From NCBI RefSeq assembly GCF_046119375.1, contig NW_027362772.1:306156001-306208087 (forward strand): a stretch of 52,087 nucleotides of DNA. The letters are read 5' to 3'. Under the pieces are notes generated by a model. That model did no database searches and was not told the DNA's origin. It saw only the letters and a list, made by a program, of their open reading frames with translations. This DNA is from Phyllobates terribilis. Taxonomy: Eukaryota. Of the stretch, positions 8,541-52,087 are shown one piece after another (the stretch's first letter is position 1; the number at the start of each line of letters is the position of its first letter). A program made the position numbers and the translations under genes.

Positions 8541-8707
8541 GTCACTGACATACATCACTTATCCTGTATTATACTCCAGAGCTGCACTCACTATTCTGCT
8601 GGTGCAGTCACTCTGTACATACATTATATTACTGATCCTGAGTTACATCCTGTATTATACTCCAGAGCTGCACTCACTATTCTGCTGGTGCGCTCACTGT
8701 GCACATA
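8541..8707. repeat. ~2 copies of the 86-bp repeat, inverted relative to the 13946-17555 array
   Basis: ATCCTGTATTATACTCCAGAGCTGCACTCACTATTCTGCTGGTGCAGTCAC is the reverse complement of the large-array unit. Confidence 0.93.
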
Positions 8708-10335
8708 CAGTACAGACCAAAAGTTTGGACACAGCTTCTCATTTAAAGATTTTTCTGTATTTTCATGACTATGAAAATTGTACATTCACACTGAAGGCAT
8801 CAAAACTATGAATTACCACATGTGGAATTATATACTTAACAAAAAAGTGTGAAACAACTGAAAATATGTCTTATATTCTAGGTTCTTCAAAGTAGCCACC
8901 TTTTGCTTTGATGACTGCTTTGCACACTCTTGGCATTCTCTTGATGAGCTTCAAGAGGTAGTCACCGGAAATGGTCTTCCAACAATCTTGAAGGAGTTCC
9001 CAGAGATGCTTAGCACTTGTTGGCCCTTTTGCCTTCACTCTGCGGTCCAGCTCACCCCAAACCATCTCGATTGGGTTCAGGTCTGGTGACTGTGGAGGCC
9101 AGGTCATCTGGCGTAGCACCCCATCACTCTCCTTCTTGGTCAAATAGCCCTTACACAGCCTGGAGGTGTTTGGGGTCATTGTCCTGTTGAAAAATAAATG
9201 ATGGTCCAATTAAAAGCAAACCGGATGGAATAGCATGCCGCTGCAAGATGCTGTGGTAGCCATGCTGGTTCAGTATGCCTTCAATTTTCATTAAAACCCC
9301 AACAGTGTCACCAGCAAAGCCCCCCCACACCATCACACCTCCTCCTCCATGCTTCACGGTGGGAACCAGGCATGTAGAGTCCATCCGTTCACCTTTTCTG
9401 CGTCTCACAAAGACACGGTGGTTGGAACCAAAGATCTCAAATTTGGACTCATCAGACCAAAGCACAGATTTCCACTGGTCTAATGTCCATTCCTTGTGTT
9501 CTTTAGCCCAAACAAGTCTCTTCTGCTTGTTGCCTGTCCTTAGCAGTGGTTTCCTAGCAGCTATTTTACCATGAAGGCCTGCTGCACAAAGTCTCCTCTT
9601 AACAGTTGTTGAAGAGATGTGTCTGCTGCTAGAACTCTGTGTGGCATTGACCTGGTCTCTAATCTGAGCTGCTGTTAACCTGCGATTTCTGAGGCTGGTG
9701 ACTCGGATAAACTTATCCTCAGAAGCAGAGGTGACTCTTGGTCTTCCTTTCCTGGGTCGGTCCTCATGTGAGCCAGTTTCTTTGTAGCGCTTGATGGTTT
9801 TTCCAACTGCACTTGGGGACACTTTCAAAGTTTTCCCAATTTTTCGGACTGACTGACCTTCATTTCTTAAAGTAATGATGGCCACTCGTTTTTCTTTACT
9901 TAGCTGCTTTTTTCTTGCCATAATACACATTCTAACAGTCTATTCAGTAGGACTATCAGCTGTGTATCCAACAGACTTCTGCACAACACAACTGATGGTC
10001 CCAACCCCATTTATAAGGCAAGAAATGCCACTTATTAAACCTGACAGGGCACACCTGTGAAGTGAAGACCATTTCCGGTGACTACCTCTTGAAGCTCATC
10101 AAGAGAATGCCAAGAGTGTGCAAAGCAGTCATCAAAGCAAAAGGTGGCTACTTTGAAGAACCTAGAATATAAGACATATTTTCAGTTGTTTCACACTTTT
10201 TTGTTAAGTATATAATTCCACATGTGTTAATTCATAGTTTTGATGTCTTCAGTGTGAATGTACAATTTTCATAGTCATGAAAATACAGAAAAATCTTTAA
10301 ATGAGAAGGTGTGTCCAAACTTTTGGTCTGTATTG
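8708..10335 (-). mobile_element. Full-length Tc1-family DD38E (Intruder-type) transposon, ~272-bp TIRs
   Basis: TA at 8706-07 and 10336-37. TIRs 8708-8979 and 10064-10335 start CA(G/A)TACAGACCAAAAGTTTGGACAC. Length 1628 bp. Confidence 0.95.
8871..9921 (-). pseudogene. DD38E transposase with 2-bp frameshift after QQDNDPKH
   Basis: [16 protein letters not shown]...WSDESK...FQQDNDPKH / TSRLCKGYL...SPDLNPIE. Rejoined frame gives 38 residues between D and E. Confidence 0.92.
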
Positions 10336-10589
10336 TACACTGCTCAAAAAATAAAGGGAACACTGAAATAACACCTCCTAGATCTGAATGAATGAAATCT
10401 TCTCATTGAATACTTTGTTCTGTATAAAGTTGAATGTGCTGACAACAAAATCACACAAAAATCATCAATGGAAATCACATTTATTAACCAATGGAGGCCT
10501 GGATTTGGAGTCACCCCCAAAATTAAAGTGCAAAAACACACTACAGGCTGATCCAACTTTGATGTAATGTCCTTAAAACAAGTCACAAT

Positions 10590-12009
10590 CAGGCTGAGTA
10601 TTGTGTGTGGCCTCCACGTGCCTGTATGACCTCCCTACAACGCCTGGGCATGCTCCTGATGAGGCTGAGTATTGTGTGTGGCCTCCACGTGCCTGTATGA
10701 CCTCCCTACAACGCCTGGGCATGCTCCTGATGAGGCTGAGTATTGTGTGTGGCCTCCACGTGCCTGTATGTCCTCCCTACAACGCCTGGCCATGCTCCTG
10801 ATGAGGCTGAGTATTGTGTGTGGCCTCCACGTGCCTGTATGACCTCCCTACAACGCCTGGCCATGCTCCTGATGAGTCTCAGTATTGTGTGTGGCCTCCA
10901 CGTGCCTGTATGACCCCCCTACAACGCCTGGGCATGCTCCTGATGAGGCTGAATATTGTGTGTGGCCTCCACGTGCCTGTATGACCTCCCTACAACGCCT
11001 GGGCATGCTCCTGATGAGGCTGAGTATTGTGTGTGGCCTCCACGTTCCTGTATGACCTCCCTACAATGCCTGGGAATGCTCTTGATGAGGCTGAGTATTG
11101 TGTGTGGCCTCCACGTGCCTGTATGACCTCCCTACAACAACTGGGCATGCTCCTGATGAGGCTCAGTATTGTGTGTGGCCTCCACGTGCCTGTATGACCT
11201 CCCTACAACGCCTGGGCATGCTCCTGATGAGGCTCAGTATTGTGTGTGGCCTCCACGTGCCTGTATGACCTCCCTACAACGCCTGGGCATGCTCCTGATG
11301 AGGCTGAGTATTGTGTGTGGCCTCCACGTGCCTGTATGACCTCCCTACAACGCCTGGGCATGCTCCTGATGAGGCTGAGTATTGTGTGTGGCCTCCACGT
11401 GCCTGTATGACCTCCCTACAACGCCTGGGCATGCTCCTGATGAGGCTCAGTATTGTGTGTGGCCTCCACGTGCCTGTATGACCTCCCTACAACGCCTGGG
11501 CATGCTCCTGATGAGTCTCAGTATTGTGTGTGGCCTCCACGTGCCTGTATGACCCCCCTACAACGCCTGGGCATGCTCCTGATGACTCTCAGTATTGTGT
11601 GTGGCCTCCACGTGCCTCTATGACCTCCCTACAACGCCTGGGCATGCTCCTGATGAGGCTGAGTATTGTGTGTGGCCTCCACGTGCCTGTATGACCTCCC
11701 TACAACGCCTGGGCATGCTCCTGATGAGGCTGAGTATTGTGTGTGGCCTCCACGTTCCTGTATGACCTCCCTACAATGCCTGGGAATGCTCCTGATGAGG
11801 CTGAGTATTGTGTGTGGCCTCCACGTGCCTGTATGACCTCCCTACAACGCCTGGGCATGCTCCTGATGAGGCTGAGTATTGTGTGTGGCCTCCACGTGCC
11901 TGTATGACCTCCCTACACCGCCTGGGCATGCTCCTGATGAGGCTGAGTATTGTGTGTGGCCTCCAATTGCCTGTATGACCTCCCTACAACGCCTGGGCAT
12001 GCTCCTGAT
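10590..12009. repeat. 20 x 71-bp tandem array derived from the 3' end of the Tc1 transposase CDS
   Basis: Unit GAGGCTGAGTATTGTGTGTGGCCTCCACGTGCCTGTATGACCTCCCTACAACGCCTGGGCATGCTCCTGAT. Minus strand reads IRSMPRRCREVIQARGGHTQY. Confidence 0.97.
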
Positions 12010-12959
12010 GAGGTTGCAGATGGTCTCCTGTGGGATCTCCTCCCAGACCTGGACTAAAGCATCCGCCAACTCCTGGACAGTCTGTGGTGCAACGTGACGT
12101 TGGTGGATGGAGCAAGACACGATGTCCCAGATGTGCTCAATCGGATTCAGGTCTGGGGAACGGGCGGCCAGTCCATAGCTTCAATGCCTTCATCTTGCAG
12201 GAACTGCTGACACACTCCAGCCACATGAGGTCTGGCATTGTCCTGCATTAGGAGGAGCCCAGGGCCAACCGCACCAGCATATGGTCTCACAAGGGGTCTG
12301 AGGATCTCATCTCGGTACCTAATGACAGTCAGGCTACCTCTAGCGAGCACATGGAGGGCTGTGCAGCCCTCCAAAGAAATGCCACCCCACACCATTACTG
12401 ACCCACTGCCAAACCGGTCATGGTGAAGGATGTTGCAGGCAGCAGATCGCTCTCCACGGCGTCTCCAGACTCTGTCTCGTCTGTCACATGTGCTCAGTGT
12501 GAACCTGCTTTCATCTGTGAAGAGCACAGGGCGCCAGTGGCCACTTTGCCAATCCTGGTGTTCTGGGGCAAATGCCAAGCGTCCTGCACGGTGTTGGGCT
12601 GTGAGCACAACCCCCATCTGTGGACGTCGGGTCCTCATACCACCCTCATGGAGTCGGTTTCTAACTGTTTGTGCAGATACATGCACATTTGTGGCCTGCT
12701 GGAGGTCATTTTGCAGGGCTCTGGCAGTGCTCCTCCTTGCACAAAGGCGGAGGTAACGGTCCTGCTGCTGGGTTGTTGCCATCCTACAGCCCCCTTCACG
12801 TCTCCTGGTGTACTGGCCTGTCTCCTGGTAGCGCCTCCAACCTCTGGACACTACGCTGACAGACACAGCAAACCTTCTTGCCACAGCTCGCATTGATGTG
12901 CCATCCTGGATGAGCTGCACTACCTGAGCAACTTCTGTGGGTTGTAGAGTCCGTCTCAT
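11944..12959 (-). pseudogene. Tc1 DD34E transposase, 1-bp frameshift before the catalytic E, stop changed to TCA
   Basis: [20 protein letters not shown]...FTDESRF...MQDNARPH...DWP / [11 protein letters not shown]...GGHTQY. Confidence 0.9.
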
Positions 12960-13452
12960 GCTACCATGAGTGTGAAAGCACAACCAACATTCAAAAGTGA
13001 CCAAAACATCAGCCAGAAAGCATTGGTACTGAGATGTGGTCTGTGGTCCCCACCTGCAGAACCACTCCTTTATTGAGGGTGTCTTGATAATTGCCAATAA
13101 TTTCCATCTATTGTCTATTCCATTTGCACAACAGCAGGTGAGATTGATTGTCAATCAGTGTTGCTTCCTCAGTGGACGGTTTGATTCCACAGAAGTTTCA
13201 TTTACTCGGAGTTGTATTCTGTTCCCTGTATTTTTTTCAGCAGGGTATATACAGCAGACATGGAGGTCTACTTTGTGTTTGTTACATTCACAGAATATAA
13301 ATATAATTCAGACAGCAGAACAGAAATCAATCAGTAGAGAAGTCCGTAGTCTGCGGTGGCTCCAGGTTGCTGCTCCTCAGGACGGTGCAGGCAGCAGAGG
13401 TGAAGGAGCGCTGCTCTGCAGCAGTAATGAGGCTCATGTGATGATGGAGATT

Positions 13453-13505
13453 TCATCCCTGTAATATGTTTCTGGCCACGATCATCCTCATCACCTCGTT
13501 GGTTC
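13453..13505 (-). CDS. ACAD8: ACAD8 exon 11
   Basis: (G)[16 protein letters not shown]; acceptor CAG. Confidence 0.95.
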
Positions 13506-16500
13506 CTGGTCCCGGAAACAAAACATTTATTATGGTCTCCTCCTCGTCCTGAGCTTGTAGGAAAGAACATTTGTAAGTGCGAAGATATTATCTACAGAAG
13601 TTACAGGCCCGAAGCCTGAGGCTGCACTACTGCGACATGTAGACAACACATCCTGCTAAGATTTGTCCGGAGCAGCGCTCTCCGGATCTATGGCTGCGTC
13701 CTGAGGTAAGTAGTGACATCACTGCACCTCACGTGATGTCATCAGGTTGCCGCAGTAGTGCAGTTCATTACAGTATGTGCACTGCAAAACTCACCCTCCA
13801 GGATCTGATGGACGCGGATATCCCGAACAAACTGCTGAACGGCGTAATCCTTCAGGTATCCGTAACCTCCGTGCATCTGCAGAGCCTGATTACACACCTG
13901 CAGACAGAAAAGCATCAGACGGCAATGCAACCAACAGAACACTGAGCGCAGCTCTGGAGGAGAATACAGGATATAACTCAGGATCAGTAATGTAATGTAT
14001 GTACACAGTGACTGCACCAGCAGAATAGTGATTGCAGCTCTGGAGTATAATACAGGATATAACTCAGGATCAGTAATGTAATGTATGTACACAGTGACTG
14101 AACCAGCAGAATAGTGAGTGCAGCTCTGGAGTATAATACAGAATGTAACTCAGGATCAGTAATGTAATGTATGTACACAGTGACTGCACCAGCAGAATAG
14201 TGAATGCAGCTCTGGAGGATAATACAGGATGTAACTCAGGATCAGTAATGTATGTACACAGTGACTGGACCAGCAGAATAGTGAGTGCAGCTCTGGAGGA
14301 TAATACAGGAGGTAACTCAGGATCAGTAATGTATGTACACAGTGACTGGACCAGCAGAATAGTGAGTGCAGCTCTGGAGGATAATACAGGAGGTAACTCA
14401 GGATCAGTAATGTAATGTATGTACACAGTGACTGAACCAGCAGAATAGTGAGTGCAGCTCTGGAGTATAATACAGGAGGTAACTCAGGATCAGTAATGTA
14501 ATGCATGTACACGGTGACTGCACCAGCAGAATAGTGAATGCCGCTCTGGAGTATAATACAGGATGTAACTCAGGATCAGTAATGTAATGTATGCACACAG
14601 TGACTGCACCAGCATAATAGTGAGTGCAGCTCTGGGGTATAATACAGGATGTAACTCAGGATCAGTAATGTAATGTATGTACACAGTGACTGCACCAGCA
14701 GAATAGTGAGTGCAGCTCTGGAGTATAATACAGGAGGTAACTCAGGATCAGTAATGTAATGTATGTACACAGTGACTGCACCAGCAGAATAGTGAGTGCA
14801 GCTCTGGGGTATAATACAGGAGGTAACTCAGGATCAGTAATGTAATGTATGTACACAGTGACTGCACCAGCAGAATAGTGAGTGCAGCTCTGGAGTATAA
14901 TACAGGAGGTAACTCAGGATCAGTAATGTAATGTACACAGTGACTGCACCAGCAGAATAGTGAGTGCAGCTCTGGAGTATAATACAGGATGTAACTCAGG
15001 ATCAGTAATGTAATGTATGTACACAGTGACTGCACCAGCAGAATAGTGAGTGCAGCTCTGGAGTATAATACAGGAGGTAACTCAGGATCAGTAATGTAAT
15101 GTATGTACACAGTGACTGCACCAGCAGAATAGTGAGTGCAGCTCTGGGGTATAATACAGGAGGTAACTCAGGATCAGTAATGTAATGTATGTACACAGTG
15201 ACTGCACCAGCAGAATAGTGAGTGCAGCTCTGGAGTATAATACAGGAGGTAACTCAGGATCAGTAATGTAATGTATGTACACAGTGACTGCACCAGCAGA
15301 ATAGTGAGTGCAGCTCTGGAGCATAATACAGGAGGTAACTCAGGATCAGTAATGTAATGTATGTACACAGTGACTGCACCAGCAGAATAGTGAGTGCAGC
15401 TCTGGAGTATAATACAGGATGTAACTCAGGATCAGTAATGTAATGTATGTACACAGTGACTGCACCAGCAGAATAGTGAGTGCAGCTCTGGAGTATAATA
15501 CAGGATGTAACTCCGGATCAGTAATGTAATGTATGTACACAGTGACTGCACCAACAGAATAGTGAGTGGAGCTCTGGAGTATAATACAGGAGGTAACTCA
15601 GGATCAGTAATGTAATGTATGTACACAGTGACTGCACCAGCAGAATAGTGAGTGCAGCTCTGGAGTATAATACAGGAGGTAACTCAGGATCAGTAATGTA
15701 ATGTATGAACACAGTGACTGCACCAACAGAATAGTGAGTGGAGCTCTGGAGTATAATACAGGAGGTAACTCAGGATCAGTAATGTAATGTATGTACACAG
15801 TGACTGCACCAGCAGAATAGTGAGTGGAGCTCTGGAGTATAATACAGGAGGTAACTCAGGATCAGTAATGTAATGTATGTACACAGTGACTGCACCAGCA
15901 GAATAGTGAGTGCAGCTCTGGAGTATAATACAGGAGGTAACTCAGGATCAGTAATGTAATGTATGTACACAGTGACTGCACCAACAGAATAGTGAGTGGA
16001 GCTCTGGAGTATAATACAGGAGGTAACTCAGGATCAGTAATGTAATGTATGTACACAGTGACTGCACCAGCAGAATAGTGAGTGCAGCTCTGGAGTATAA
16101 TACAGGATGTAACTCAGGATCAGTAATGTAATGTATGTACACAGTGACTGCACCAGCAGAATAGTGATTGCAGCTCTGGAGTATAATACAGGATGTAACT
16201 CAGGATCAGTAATGTAATGTATGTACACAGTGACTGCACCAGCAGAATAGTGATTGCAGCTCTGGAGTATAATACAGGAGGTAACTCAGGATCAGTAATG
16301 TAATGTATGTACACAGTGACTGCACCAGAATAGTGAGTGCAGCTCTGGAGTATAATACAGGATGTAACTCAGGATAAGTAATTTATGTACACAGTGACTG
16401 CACCAGCAGAATAGTGAGTGCAGCTCTGGAGTATAATACAGGAGGTAACTCAGGATCAGTAATGTAATGTATGTACACAGTGACTGCACCAGAATAGTGA

Positions 16501-19500
16501 GTGCAGCTCTGGAGTATAATACAGGATGTAACTCAGGATCAGTAATGTAATGTATGTACACAGTGACTGCACCAGCAGAATAGTGAGTGCAGCTCTGGAG
16601 TATAATACAGGATGTAACTCAGGATCAGTAATGTAATGTATGTGCACAGTAACTGCACCAGCAGAATATTGAGTGCAGCTCTGGAGTATAATACAGGAGG
16701 TAACTCAGGATCAGTAATGTAATGTATGTACACAGTGACTGCACCAGCAGAATAGTGAGTGCAGCTCTGGAGTATAATACAGGAGGTAACTCAGGATCAG
16801 TAATGTATGTACACAGTGACTGCACCAGCAGAATAGTGAGTGCAGCTCTGGAGTATAATACAGGATGTAACTCAGGATCAGTAATGTAATGTATGTACAC
16901 AGTGACTGCACCAGCAGAATAGTGAGTGCAGCTCTGGGGTATAATACAGGAGGTAACTCAGGATCAGTAATGTAATGTATGTACACAGTGACTGCACCAG
17001 CAGAATAGTGAGTGCAGCTCTGGAGTATAGTATAGGATGTAACTCAGGATCAGTAATGTAATGTATGTACACAGTGACTGCACCAGCAGAATAGTGAGTG
17101 CAGCTCTGGAGTATAGTATAGGATGTAACTCAGGATCAGTAATGTAATGTATGTACACAGTGACTGCACCAGCAGAACAGTGAGTGCCGCTCTGGAGTAT
17201 AATACAGGATGTAACTCAGGATCAGTAATGTAATGTATGTACACAGTGACTGCACCAGCAGAATAGTGAGTGCAGCTCTGGAGAATAATACAGAATGTAG
17301 CTCAGGATCAGTAATGTAATGTGTGTACACAGTGACTGCACCAGCAGAATAGTGAGTGCAGCTCTGGAGTATAATACAGGAGGTAACTCAGGATCAGTAA
17401 TGTAATGTATGTACACAGTGACTGCACCAGCAGAATAGTGAGTGCAGCTCTGGAGTATAATACAGGATGTAACTCAAGATCAGTAATGTAATGTATGTAC
17501 ACAGTGACTGCACCAGCAGAATAGTGAGTGCAGCTCTGGAGGATAATACAGGATGTGAGTTAATCATAAAGCAGATGAAGACCATACCAGATGGTCTGGG
17601 CGCTGGTGAGTTTTATAACATTTCTGGGTGTATTTTTACGGTTTTACAGTTTCTTATGTCGCTCACCTTAAAACATTCGTCAGTAGCGTACAATTTGGCC
17701 ATAGCGCAGAGCGTTGCGGCGTCTCTGTGCTCCTCCTGCAGAGCTTGCGCTGCATGGCGTACGATCAGCCGCGCAGTAACCAGCTGCGTCGCCATCTCCG
17801 CCAATCTGAATTGTAGATACTGAGGGAAACAAACGACGCACAATGAAACCCGAGAATGACGATGATTTCTGCCGGTAACCGGTAAACGCAGTGACGTTAC
17901 CTGATTATTAGCGAGCGGCTCCCCGAACTGCTTCCGCACAGAAAGGTGATCGCGGGACAGTAAGACCGAGGCGTGGGCCGCACCCAGCGAGCACGAGGCT
18001 GAGGAGCACATGACTGCAGTGAGTCCACGAATAGAGGCGAAGCCACGGATGACCCGAGCAGTCCACCTGACCGCCCACTACAAGGAGGATGGCAGGGAAG
18101 GAGGGAGGAGAGGACGGAAGGGGTAGGGAGGGAGGGGAGGAGAGGACGGAAGGGGCAGGGAGGGAGGGGAGGGGAGGAGAGGACGGAAGGGGAGGAGAGG
18201 ACGGAAGGGGAGGAGAGGATGGAAGGGGAGGAGAGGACGGAAGGGGAGGAGAGGATGGAAGGGGAGGAGAGGACGGAAGGGGAGGAGAGGAGAGGACGGA
18301 AGGGGAGGAGAGGACAGAAGGGGAGGAGAGGACGGAAGGGGAGGAGAGGACGGAAGGGGAGGAGAGGACGGAAGGGGAGGAGAGGACGGAAGGGGAGGAG
18401 AGGACGGAAGGGGAGGAGATGACGGAAGGGGAGGAGAGGACGGAAGGGGAGGAGAGGACGGAAGGGGCAGGGAAGGAGGGGAGGAGAGGACGGAAGGGGT
18501 AGGGAGGGAGGGGAGGAGATGACGGAAGGGGCAGGGAGGGAGAGGAGGAGAGGACGGAAGGGGAGGAGAGGACAGAAGGGGAGGAGAGGACGGAAGGGGA
18601 GGAGAGGACGGAAGGGGAGGAGAGGACGGAAGGGGAGGAGAGGACGGAAGGGGAGGAGAGGACGGAAGGGGAGGAGAGGACGGAAGGGGAGGAGAGGACG
18701 GAAGGGGAGGAGAGGACGGAAGGGGAGGAGAGGACGGAAGGGGAGGAGAGGACGGAAGGGGAGGAGAGGACGGAAGGGGAGGAGAGGACGGAAGGGGAGG
18801 AGAGGACGGAAGGGGAGGAGAGGACGGAAGGGGCAGGGAGGGAGGGGAGGAGAGGACGGAAGGGGCAGGGAGGGAGGGGAGGAGAGGACGGAAGGGGCAG
18901 GGAAAGGGGACGGAAGGGGCAAGGAAGGAGGGAAGAGGGGACGGAAGGGGCAAGGAAGGAGGGAAGAGGGGACGTAAGGGGCAAGGAAGGAGGGAAGAGG
19001 GGACGTAAGGGGCAAGGAAGGAGGGGAGGAGAGGACGTAAGGGGCAAGGAAGGAGGGGAGGAGAGGACGTAAGGGGCAGGGAGGGAGGGGAGGAGAGGAC
19101 GTAAGGGGCAGGGAAGGAGGGGAGGAGAGGACGTAAGGGGCAGGGAAGGAGGGGAGGAGAGGACGGAAGGGGCAGGGAAGGAGGGGAGGAGAGGACGGAA
19201 GGGGCAGGGAAGGAGGGGAGGAGAGGACGGAAGGGGCAGGGAAGGAGGGGAGGAGAGGACGGAAGGGGCAGGGAAGGAGGGGAGGAGAGGACGGAAGGGG
19301 CAGGGAAGGAGGGGAGGAGAGGACGGAAGGGGCAGGGAAGGAGGGGAGGAGAGGACGGAAGGGGCAGGGAAGGAGGGGAGGAGAGGACGGAAGGGGCAGG
19401 GAAGGAGGGGAGGAGAGGACGGAAGGGGCAGGGAAGGAGGGGAGGAGAGGACGGAAGGGGCAGGGAAGGAGGGGAGGAGAGGACGGAAGGGGCAGGGAAG

Positions 19501-22500
19501 GAGGGGAGGAGAGGACGGAAGGGGCAGGGAAGGAGGGGAGGAGAGGACGGAAGGGGCAGGGAAGGAGGGGAGGAGAGGACGGAAGGGGCAGGGAAGGAGG
19601 GGAGGAGAGGACGGAAGGGGCAGGGAAGGAGGGGAGGAGAGGACGGAAGGGGCAGGGAAGGAGGGGAGGAGAGGACGGAAGGGGCAGGGAAGGAGGGGAG
19701 GAGAGGACGGAAGGGGCAGGGAAGGAGGGGAGGAGAGGACGGAAGGGGCAGGGAAGGAGGGGAGGAGAGGACGGAAGGGGCAGGGAAGGAGGGGAGGAGA
19801 GGACGGAAGGGGCAGGGAAGGAGGGGAGGAGAGGACGGAAGGGGCAGGGAAGGAGGGGAGGAGAGGACGGAAGGGGCAGGGAAGGAGGGGAGGAGAGGAC
19901 GGAAGGGGCAGGGAAGGAGGGGAGGAGAGGACGGAAGGGGCAGGGAAGGAGGGGAGGAGAGGACGGAAGGAGCAGGGAAGGAGGGGAGGAGAGGACGGAA
20001 GGGGCAGGGAAGGAGGGGAGGAGAGGACGGAAGGGGCAGGGAAGGAGGGGAGGAGAGGACGGAAGGGGCAGGCAAGGAGGGGAGGAGAGGACGGAAGGGG
20101 CAGGCAAGGAGGGGAGGAGAGGACGGAAGGGGCAGGCAAGGAGGGGAGGAGAGGACGGAAGGGGCAGGGAAAAAGGGGAGGAGAGGACGGAAGGGGCAGG
20201 CAAGGAGGGGAGGAGAGGACGGAAGGGGCAGGCAAGGAGGGGAGGAGAGGACGGAAGGGGCAGGCAAGGAGGGGAGGAGAGGACGGAAGGGGCAGGGAAG
20301 GAGGGGAGGAGAGGACGGAAGGGGCAGGGAAGGAGGGGAGGAGAGGACGGAAGGGGCAGGGAAGGAGGGGAGGAGAGGACGGAAGGGGCAGGTAAGGAGG
20401 GGAGTAGAGGACGGAAGGGGCAGGGAAGGAGGGGAGGAGATGACGGAAGGGGCAGGGAAGGAGGGGAGGAGAGGACGGAAGGGGCAGGGAAGGAGGGGAG
20501 GAGAGGACGGAAGGGGCAGGGAAGGAGGGGAGGAGAGGACGGAAGGGGCAGGGAAGGAGGGGAGGAGAGGACGGAAGGGGCAGGGAAGGAGGGGAGGAGA
20601 GGACGGAAGGGGCAGGGAAGGAGGGGAGGAGAGGACGGAAGGGGCAGGGAAGGAGGGGAGGAGAGGACGGAAGGGGCAGGGAAGGAGGGGAGGAGAGGAC
20701 GGAAGGGGCAGGGAAGGAGGGGAGGAGAGGACGGAAGGGGCAGGGAAGGAGGGGAGGAGAGGACGGAAGGGGCAGGGAAGGAGGGGACGGAAGGAGCAGG
20801 GAAGGAGGGAGGAGGGGACGGAAGGGGCAGGGAAGGAGGGAGGAGGGGACGGAAGGGGCAGGGAAGGAGGGAGAAGGGGACGGAAGGGGCAGGGAAAGAG
20901 GGAGGAGAGGACGGAAGGGGCAGGGAAGAGGAGACGGAAGGGGCAAAGAAGGAGGGAAGAGGGGACGGAAGGAGGGAAGAGGGGACGGAAGGGGCAAGGA
21001 AGGAGGGAGGACGGAAGGGGCAGGGAAGGAGGGAGGACGGAAGGGGCAGGGAAGGAGGGAGGACGGAAGGGGCAGGGAAGGAGGGAGGACGGAAGGGGCA
21101 GGGAAGGAGGGAGGAGGGGACGGAAGGGGCAGGGAAGGAGGGAGGAGGGGACGGAAGGGGCAAGGAAGGAGGGAGGACGGAAGGGGCAGGGAAGGAGGGA
21201 GGACGGAAGGGGCAGGGAAGGAGGGAGGACGGAAGGGGCAGGGAAGGAGGGAGGAGGGGACGGAAGGGGCAGGGAAGGAGGGAGGAGGGGACGGAAGGGG
21301 CAGGGAAGGAGGGAGGAGGGGACGGAAGGGGCAGGGAAGGAGGGAGGAGGGGACGGAAGGGGCAGGGAAGGAGGGAGGAGGGGACGGAAGGGGCAGGGAA
21401 GGAGGGAGGAGGGGACGGAAGGGGCAGGGAAGGAGGGAGGAGGGGACGGAAGGGGCAGGGAAGGAGGGAGGAGGGGACGGAAGGGGCAGGGAAGGAGGGA
21501 GGAGGGGACGGAAGGGGCAGGGAAGGAGGGAGGAGGGGACGGAAGGGGCAGGGAAGGAGGGAGGAGGGGACGGAAGGGGCAGGGAAGGAGGGAGGGGACG
21601 GAAGGGGCAGGGAAGGAGGGAGGGGACGGAAGGGGCAGGGAAGGAGGGAGGAGGGGACGGAAGGGGCAGGGAAGGAGGGAGGAGGGGACGGAAGGGGCAG
21701 GGAGGGAGGGAGGAGGGGACGGAAGGGGCAGAGAAGGAGGGAGGAGGGGACGGAAGGGGCAGGGAAGGAGGGAGGAGGGGACGGAAGGGGCAAAGAAAGA
21801 GGGAGGAGGAGACGGAAGGGGCAAAGAAAGAGGGAGGAGGAGACGGAAGGGGCAAAGAAGGAGGGAGGAGGGGACGGAAGGGGCAGGGAAGGAGGGAGGA
21901 GGGGACGGAAGGGGTAGGGAAGGAGGGAGGAGGGGACGGAAGGGGCAGGGAAAGAGGGAGGAGAGGACGGAAGGGGCAAGGAAGGAGGGAAGAGGGGACG
22001 GAAGGGGCAAGGAAGGAGGGAAGGGAGGACGGAAGGGACAGGGGAGGAGGGGACGGAAGGGGTAGGGAAGGAGGGAGGAGGGGACGGAAGGGGCAGGGAA
22101 AGAGGGAGGAGAGGACGGAAGGGGCAAGGAAGGAGGGAAGAGAGGACGGAAGGGGCAGGGGAGGAGGGAGGAGGGGACGGAAGGGGCAAGGAAGGAGGGA
22201 GGAGGGGACGGAAGGGGCAAGGAAGGAGGGGACGGAAGGAGCAAGGAAGGAGGGAGGAGGGAAAGGAAGGGGCAGCGAAGGAGGGAGGAGGGGAAGGAGG
22301 GAGGAGGGGATGGAGGGGGAAAGGAGGGGACGGAAGGGGCGAGGAGGGGACGGAAGGGGCAGGGAAGGAGAGAGGAGGGGACGGAAGGGGCAGAGAAGGA
22401 GAGAGGAGGGGACGGAAGGGGCAGAGAAGGAGGGAGGAGGGGACGGAAGGGGAAGGGAAGGAGGGTAGAGAGGACGGAAGGGTCATTGAAGGAGAGAGGA

Positions 22501-51344: not shown

Positions 51345-52087
51345 TGAGGGCGAGGAGGAGGAGAAAGGGGGAGGAGGAGGAGAAAGGGGGAGGAGGAGGA
51401 GAAAGGGGGAGGAGGAGGAGAAAGGGGGAGGAGGAGGAGAAAGGGGGAGGAGGAGGAGAAAGGGGGAGGAGGAGGAGAAAGGGGGAGGAGGAGGAGAAAG
51501 GGGGAGGAGGAGGAGAAAGGGGGAGGAGGAGGAGAAAGGGGAGGAGGAGGAGAAAGGGGGANNNNNNNNNNNNNNNNNNNNNNNNNNNNNNNNNNNNNNN
51601 NNNNNNNNNNNNNNNNNNNNNNNNNNNNNNNNNNNNNNNNNNNNNNNNNNNNNNNNNNNNNNNNNNNNNNNNNNNNNNNNNNNNNNNNNNNNNNNNNNNN
51701 NNNNNNNNNNNNNNNNNNNNNNNNNNNNNNNNNNNNNNNNNNNNNNNNNNNGAGAAAGGGGAGGAGGAGAAAGGGGAGGAGGAGAAAGGGGAGGAGGAGA
51801 AAGGGGAGGAGGAGAAAGGGGAGGAGGAGAAAGGGGAGGAGGAGAAAGGGGAGGAGGAGAAAGGGGAGGAGGAGAAAGGGGAGGAGGAGAAAGGGGAGGA
51901 GGAGAAAGGGGAGGAGGAGAAAGGGGAGGAGGAGAAAGGGGAGGAGGAGAAAGGGGAGGAGGAGAAAGGGGAGGAGGAGAAAGGGGAGGAGGAGAAAGGG
52001 GAGGAGGAGAAAGGGGAGGAGGAGAAAGGGGAGGAGGAGAAAGGGGAGGAGGAGAAAGGGGAGGAGGAGAAAGGGGAGGAGGAGAAA
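51345..52087. repeat. Pure GA minisatellite (19-bp unit left of the gap, 15-bp unit right), VPS26B intron 1
   Basis: GAGAAAGGGGGAGGAGGAG repeats, then GAGAAAGGGGAGGAG repeats. Confidence 0.97.
51562..51751. other. Assembly gap (190 N)
   Basis: Run of N inside the GA array. Confidence 1.

What the first reader, a model, noticed from the sequence alone, without database searches (positions are those of the whole stretch)
10590..12009. A satellite born from the last codons of a Tc1 transposase (20 x 71 bp)
Seen: the unit is the C-terminal IRSMPRRCREVIQARGGHTQY plus the stop position, amplified in place with both TIRs and TA duplications intact. Six units keep the TGA and fourteen have TCA/TTCA; the unit next to the CDS has lost the stop. 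Rare variants recur 10 units apart (11016/11726) and 9 units apart (10874/11513), implying several unequal exchanges. Inference: short CCT(C)AT microhomology at the unit ends seeded it. This is a snapshot of coding-sequence-to-satellite conversion, and the intact ends could let the array move.
Basis: partly seen in the sequence, partly recalled or inferred. Interest (0 to 1): 0.7.

Follow-up and report, generated by a model that had tools for sequence, protein, structure and literature searches.

The report
Minisatellite grown from Tc1 transposase tail
A dead Tc1 "jumping gene" in this (probably frog) genome has copied the last 71 bases of its own transposase gene 20 times head to tail; the origin is very easy to read, but it is an ordinary, probably functionless case of repeat DNA arising from a transposon.

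Summary
The array is real: 20 units of 71 bp at 10591-12010, 96% alike. On the minus strand each unit is the last 21 codons, the stop position and 5 more bases of a Tc1 transposase. Six units keep TGA and fourteen have TCA. Rare variants recur 9 and 10 units apart.

A single-unit relative from a metagenome (L003, 93% identical end to end) has the hexamer CCTCAT only twice, exactly 71 bp apart, at the two unit boundaries. So a misalignment between these short repeats made the first duplication, and unequal exchange did the rest.

The host element (10338-13245) is dead. It has a 1-bp frameshift in the transposase and a damaged 5' inverted repeat (4 changes in 27 bp, including the terminal CA, plus an 11-bp deletion). 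"Intact ends" is therefore overstated.

The scan has noted this before on other DNA of the same genome. At least four other unchecked notes describe 71-bp arrays from Tc1 transposase tails. If they hold, this is not a one-off birth but a dispersed array-bearing variant.

It is a known kind of event (transposon-derived tandem repeats) and of low to moderate interest.

The parts
10338..13245 (-). Whole Tc1-type element (2908 bp; 1559 bp if the array is collapsed to one unit). The transposase is on the minus strand.
   Evidence: The collapsed element aligns end to end with L003 at 93% identity. Pfam finds HTH_Tnp_Tc3_2 and DDE_3.
10336..10337 (.). Flanking TA at the element's 3' end. The same TA is also the right-hand target duplication of the neighbouring Tc1 (8708-10335).
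10338..10363 (+). 3' terminal inverted repeat. It matches the family consensus apart from one missing A.
10364..10590 (-). 3' untranslated part of the element between the array and the inverted repeat.
   Evidence: Aligned to L003.
10588..10593 (-). Downstream copy of the seeding hexamer. It now reads CCTGAT on the minus strand; the family has CCTCAT.
10591..12010 (-). Array of 20 units of 71 bp. Each unit is the last 21 codons, the stop position and 5 nt.
10875..11087 (.). Units 5-7, the first copy of a block that was duplicated.
   Evidence: Variants are shared with units 14, 16 and 17.
11514..11797 (.). Units 14-17, the second copy of the block, with unit 15 as an extra copy of unit 14.
12008..12013 (-). 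Upstream copy of the seeding hexamer CCTCAT (minus strand), inside codons L-I of the motif NLIRSM.
12011..12959 (-). Transposase coding sequence upstream of the array, from the start codon at 12959.
12147..12165 (-). Site of the 1-bp deletion (frameshift) between MDWP and [11 protein letters not shown].
13219..13245 (-). 5' terminal inverted repeat, damaged: 4 changes in 27 bp including the terminal CA becoming CC, and an 11-bp deletion just inside.
13246..13247 (.). Flanking TA at the element's 5' end.

Best explanation
This is a transposon-derived minisatellite with no function of its own. Shown: the unit is the last 71 bp of the gene region of a Tc1 element. That element belongs to the family shared by salmonids, other fishes and frogs. 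In the unamplified family sequence the unit is bounded by the only two CCTCAT hexamers of the element, 71 bp apart. Inferred: a misalignment between these two hexamers made the first tandem duplication, either by replication slippage or by microhomology-guided repair or exchange between sister chromatids. The two 71-bp copies then gave enough homology for unequal exchange. This added single units (14 to 15) and a block of about nine units (units 5-7 copied as 14-17), and spread the derived TCA variant to 14 units. Such a duplication is silent for the transposase, because the first unit still ends in the stop codon and the extra units only lengthen the 3' untranslated part. An active element could therefore carry it. 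Weakest step, inferred only from unchecked notes: the first duplication probably arose once in a progenitor copy, and array-bearing copies were spread by transposition. Each copy then gained or lost units where it landed. The copy here is dead and cannot move now. The core (origin, seed, unequal exchange, no function) I hold at about 0.9. The whole statement, including the inherited first duplication, I hold at about 0.55.
For: Array anatomy and variant pattern. Unit equals the transposase tail. Relatives are 85-92% identical in protein and carry one tail ending GGHTHY then a stop. L003 is 93% identical in DNA, has one unit, and has CCTCAT only at 1244 and 1315. Every array unit aligns to 77 bp of L003, which is 71 plus the 6 shared bases. 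Units 9, 10 and 13 differ from the L003 unit at one base only. There are about 16 independent changes in 1420 bp of array (about 1.1%), against 7% between the element body and L003, so the present units coalesce later than the element's decay. For the inherited step: 91 other direct-repeat pairs of 6 bp or more at spacings of 20-200 bp exist in the family sequence, so repeated independent use of this one pair would be unlikely. Unchecked notes report 71-bp arrays from Tc1 transposase tails at four or more other places in this genome. Two of these notes give whole-element sizes, 2414 and 4761 letters, that fit 1559 + n x 71. Transposon-derived tandem repeats and microhomology and unequal-exchange models are reviewed in PMC9659126 and PMC12628747.
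Against: No second copy of the array could be read here. None is in the window. The unit-junction pattern is absent from metagenome, viral and prokaryote genome collections. Array reading frames have no relatives in the protein collection. The three close relatives L001, L003 and L004 and all 120 listed proteins have a single tail. None of those collections is expected to hold this genome, so these blanks weigh little. The notes on other loci are unchecked. The unit shows no unusual hairpin that would favour slippage (z = 0.11). Both edge units carry the derived TCA, which a simple edge-conserving unequal-exchange model does not predict.
Confidence: 0.55

Rival explanations
1. One-off birth at this locus. 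A single-unit Tc1 copy inserted here, died, and then duplicated and amplified its tail in place. No other copy descends from an array-bearing ancestor. Any other 71-bp arrays in the genome are independent births at the same CCTCAT pair in a genome that makes arrays very readily.
For: Every relative that could be read has one unit. The present units are younger than the element's decay. 37% of this window is tandem arrays, so the region or genome is array-prone. The CCTCAT pair is a family feature, so births could recur.
Against: The family sequence offers 91 comparable repeat pairs, so hitting the same one at several loci is unlikely. Unchecked notes list four or more other 71-bp arrays in about 40 Mb sampled.
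Confidence: 0.38
2. Assembly artefact: the true locus has one or a few units, and the assembler inflated a short repeat.
For: Tandem arrays are error-prone in assemblies. No reads could be laid here.
Against: There are 12 distinct unit sequences, with private changes and an ordered block structure at 9-10 units. This is not what a collapsed or stuttered repeat looks like. The exact copy number could still be wrong.
Confidence: 0.03
3. A selected feature: a repeat-bearing protein tail, or a regulatory or RNA element downstream of the neighbouring acyl-CoA dehydrogenase gene.
For: The array lies about 1.4-2.9 kb downstream of the apparent last exon of that gene, on the same strand.
Against: 71 is not a multiple of 3, so the frame changes at each unit and stops recur. 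The transposase upstream is frameshifted. The unit folds no better than shuffled sequence. No relatives of the array reading frames were found.
Confidence: 0.02

Closest known systems
miDNA4 of Xenopus tropicalis (Tc1/mariner MITE with an internal tandem repeat; Scalvenzi and Pollet 2014, as described in PMC12628747 and PMC12054243)
   Same: It is a Tc1/mariner-type element of a frog that carries an internal repeat, present as one unit or as arrays of variable length. The repeat is bounded by short direct repeats of 5 bp or more, and the element disperses it.
   Different: miDNA4 is a short non-coding MITE, and its repeat is thought to have been captured. Here the host is a full-length element and the unit is its own coding tail. 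Dispersal is not shown here.
Satellites derived from transposon reading frames (LINE-1 ORF2: PROsat, Pvc20; chicken CR1 ORF2/3'UTR HinfI repeat; Table 1 of PMC9659126)
   Same: Coding sequence of a mobile element is turned into a tandem repeat.
   Different: Those come from retrotransposons and reach satellite scale. That table lists no case from a Tc1 transposase reading frame.
Tetris (Drosophila virilis foldback transposon, PMC4079207) and Xstir/Xmix of Xenopus laevis
   Same: Internal tandem repeats of a DNA transposon serve as building blocks of an emerging satellite.
   Different: There the repeats come from the inverted-repeat arms, not from the gene, and arrays also exist free of the element.
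Salmonid-type Tc1-like families shared by fishes, lamprey and frogs (de Boer et al. 2007, PMC2198921)
   Same: The host element is 85-92% identical in protein to copies in Salmo, Oncorhynchus, Hucho, Pygocentrus, Cirrhinus, Leptobrachium and Xenopus.
   Different: None of the listed relatives has the tail duplicated. I could not say which named DTSsa family it is.

Membership tests
Tc1/mariner superfamily, Tc1-like (DD34E) element | Transposase with paired-type HTH DNA-binding domains and a DDE catalytic domain | tested here: met
   HTH_Tnp_Tc3_2 scores 68 bits, above its cut-off. DDE_3 scores 26.2 and 17 bits on the two pieces, split by the frameshift. Relatives carry both domains.
Tc1/mariner superfamily, Tc1-like (DD34E) element | 34 residues between the second D and the E of the catalytic triad | tested here: met
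   Counted across the frameshift from QDNARPH to NPIEH in the two frames. The stretch is the same in intact relatives.
Tc1/mariner superfamily, Tc1-like (DD34E) element | Terminal inverted repeats and TA target duplication | tested here: met
   TA is present at both ends. Both repeats are recognisable (24/28 to each other), but the 5' one is damaged.
Autonomous or mobilisable element | Open transposase frame and both termini matching the family | tested here: not met
   There is a 1-bp deletion near 12150-12165. The 5' terminus reads CC in place of CA, has 3 more changes and an 11-bp deletion.
Transposon-derived tandem repeat (minisatellite) | Unit is collinear with a part of the element and is bounded by the element's own flanking sequence | tested here: met
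   Each unit aligns to L003 1244-1320, and both flanks continue the L003 alignment.
Satellite DNA in the usual sense | Long arrays (tens of kb or more) at many loci, free of the parent element | tested here: not met
   The array is 1.42 kb, inside one element, with no second copy in the window. Genome-wide abundance could not be tested.
Mobile array-bearing transposon variant (miDNA4-like) | The same array inside family copies at several unrelated loci, sharing derived variants | not testable with these tools
   Only unchecked notes point to other loci.

The most novel reading that the evidence does not exclude
A subfamily of this Tc1 family carries the 71-bp tail duplication as a heritable, transposase-neutral passenger and has seeded the genome with expandable minisatellites at many insertion sites. 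This would be a full-length, coding counterpart of the Xenopus miDNA4 MITE. It would show how one microhomology slip in an active transposon can multiply into hundreds of independent array nurseries.
Probability: 0.45. Interest if true: 0.45.

Novelty: new member of a known kind. Interest (0 to 1): 0.27.

Why it matters
It gives an unusually clean example of how a tandem array starts. The unamplified relative shows the exact 6-bp direct repeats that bound the unit, and the array still records its later block duplications. This illustrates accepted models and does not change them. It would matter more if the array-bearing form proves to be a dispersed, once-mobile variant. Transposition would then be shown to spread ready-made array seeds, which could help explain why this genome is so rich in minisatellites.

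Tried and rejected

A junction-specific 26-base pattern found nothing in metagenome contigs, viral contigs or prokaryote genome contigs.

Two word-based protein searches with array reading frames found nothing. Neither blank says much, because the host genome is not expected in those collections.

A search for the peptide as a word met no finding.

Hairpin-driven slippage is rejected: two units fold no better than shuffles.

I considered that TCA with a stop two codons later (the Y-S-A-stop reading of unit 1) was ancestral. This is rejected because relatives have TAC TGA.

TRF on 80 related metagenome loci showed arrays near some distant Tc1 elements, but none at the tail of a close relative.

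The large representative protein search was not used, since the protein family was not in doubt.

Full report
**Observation.** Tandem Repeats Finder reports one array at 10591-12013: period 71, 20.0 copies, 96% matches, no indels, score 2643.
- Cut in register from 10591, there are 20 units with 12 distinct sequences. Mean pairwise difference is 2.66 bases, or 3.7%.
- On the minus strand each unit reads IRSMPRRCREVIQARGGHTQY, then the stop position and five more bases.
- Units 5, 9, 10, 13, 14 and 15 have TGA at the stop position; the other fourteen have TCA.
- Unit 20, which abuts the coding sequence, has TCA.
- Units 5 and 14 are identical. Units 7 and 17 share three rare changes. Unit 15 is a near copy of unit 14.
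- So a block of roughly nine units was duplicated, and single units were added as well.

**The host element.** The array sits in a Tc1-type element at 10338-13245, with the transposase on the minus strand.
- The element is 2908 bp, or 1559 bp with the array collapsed, and TA lies on both sides.
- Pfam finds HTH_Tnp_Tc3_2 and DDE_3.
- The transposase frame is open from 12959 to a stop at 12147-12149. It resumes in another frame at [11 protein letters not shown].
- Alignment with a relative places a 1-bp deletion there.
- The 3' inverted repeat at 10338-10363 matches the family.
- The 5' inverted repeat (13219-13245) differs at 4 of 27 positions. One of these is the second base of the terminus. 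It also lacks 11 bp just inside.
- By contrast, five other ends from L001, L003 and L004 keep the consensus or nearly so.
- From general knowledge of Tc1/mariner elements, the terminal CA is needed for cleavage.

**The family.** The 270-residue N-terminal piece is 85-92% identical to Tc1 transposases of Salmo, Oncorhynchus, Hucho, Pygocentrus and Cirrhinus, and of the frogs Leptobrachium and Xenopus tropicalis.
- This is one of the salmonid-type Tc1-like families known to be shared among fishes, lamprey and frogs (PMC2198921).
- Of about 82 readable tails, 68 end in GGHTHY followed by the stop. None of the 120 listed proteins repeats the tail.

**The seed.** A metagenome contig (L003, 1577 bp) holds a single-unit copy that aligns end to end with the collapsed element at 93%.
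- In L003 the hexamer CCTCAT occurs only twice, at 1244 and 1315. These are exactly 71 bp apart and lie exactly at the two unit boundaries.
- Each array unit aligns to 77 bp of L003, which is 71 plus the six shared bases.
- L003 has TAC TGA, so TGA is ancestral and TCA is derived. Units 9, 10 and 13 differ from the L003 unit by a single base, CAC to CAA, which all 20 units share.
- In the window the upstream hexamer is intact (12008-12013). The downstream one now reads CCTGAT (10588-10593).
- The unit has no unusual secondary structure (z = 0.11). I therefore favour plain misalignment between the hexamers in replication or in repair between sister chromatids, followed by unequal exchange. These are the models reviewed in PMC9659126 and PMC12628747. 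The mechanism itself is inferred, not shown.

**Timing.** I count about 16 independent changes in the 1420 bp of array (about 1.1%). The element body differs from L003 by 7%. The present units therefore coalesce well after the element began to decay, and much of the growth to 20 units happened at this locus.

**Where was the first duplication made?** This could not be tested.
- The window holds no second family copy.
- A junction-specific pattern is absent from three public collections, and array reading frames have no relatives. None of these collections should contain this genome.
- The scan's own notes, which are unchecked, list other 71-bp arrays from Tc1 transposase tails in the same genome:
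  - s1-241609 (2414 letters, inside both inverted repeats);
  - s1-209146 (4761 letters, inside both inverted repeats);
  - s1-205071 (30 x 71 bp);
  - s1-241587 (1355 letters, 2.86 Mb from this window on the same piece).
- The two whole-element sizes fit 1559 + 12 x 71 and 1559 + 45 x 71 to within a few bases.
- The family sequence has 91 other direct-repeat pairs of 6 bp or more at spacings of 20-200 bp. Repeated independent use of this one pair is therefore unlikely.
- A tail duplication is also silent for the transposase. The first unit still ends in the stop, so an active element could carry it.
- I therefore lean (about 55:38) to a single origin in a progenitor copy, followed by dispersal. 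This rests on notes I could not check.

**Comparison and novelty.** Transposon-derived tandem repeats are a well-catalogued kind.
- The closest case is miDNA4, a Tc1/mariner MITE of Xenopus tropicalis with an internal repeat of variable copy number bounded by short direct repeats.
- Reading-frame-derived satellites are known for LINE elements. The table in that review lists none from a Tc1 transposase frame.
- This is a new member of a known kind. At 1.4 kb it is a minisatellite rather than a satellite.
- Earlier follow-ups in this genome reached the same "ordinary" verdict for 33-bp arrays from Tc1 genes.

**Verdict.** The array is an ordinary, probably functionless product of an array-prone genome, with an unusually legible origin.

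Noticed in passing
window 8706-10337: A second Tc1-type element of a different family lies at 8708-10335, with 274-bp inverted repeats that are 99% complementary, so it is young. Its transposase is on the minus strand, split into 259-aa and 112-aa frames, and the last codons lie inside the inverted repeat. Its right-hand TA (10336-7) is the same TA that flanks the studied element, so it inserted exactly into that flanking TA.
   Followed up: partly
window 13793-13900 (minus) and about 13453-13506 (minus): An exon encodes the C-terminal domain of an acyl-CoA dehydrogenase (Pfam Acyl-CoA_dh_1, E = 2.5e-10). A probable last exon ends in NILQG followed by a stop. The Tc1 element starts about 200 bp downstream of that stop, on the same strand, so it may lie in or just beyond the 3' untranslated region.
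   Followed up: partly
window 13930-17553 and 8640-8700: There is an 86-bp array of 42.5 copies, 95% alike, next to the dehydrogenase exon. One inverted copy of the same 86-bp unit lies just left of the neighbouring Tc1, so this unit belongs to a dispersed repeat family.
   Followed up: no
whole window: About 19.5 kb (37%) of the 52-kb window is tandem arrays of many unrelated units (periods 15 to 266 bp; large ones at 18138-22524, 23091-25537 and 28963-31615). Runs of N at 26919-27110 and 51562-51751 were left alone.
   Followed up: no
L061:1205-1386 and L061:1649-1848: A distant Tc1 relative on a metagenome contig is followed by two 32-bp arrays whose units are reverse complements of each other. 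This suggests that both inverted-repeat arms of a neighbouring element expanded.
   Followed up: no
L003 (contig OIWO01016899.1): A metagenome contig holds a nearly complete copy of this vertebrate Tc1 family, with perfect 27-bp termini and TA flanks but internal deletions of 54 and 2 bp. It is presumably host or environmental vertebrate DNA in the sample.
   Followed up: no
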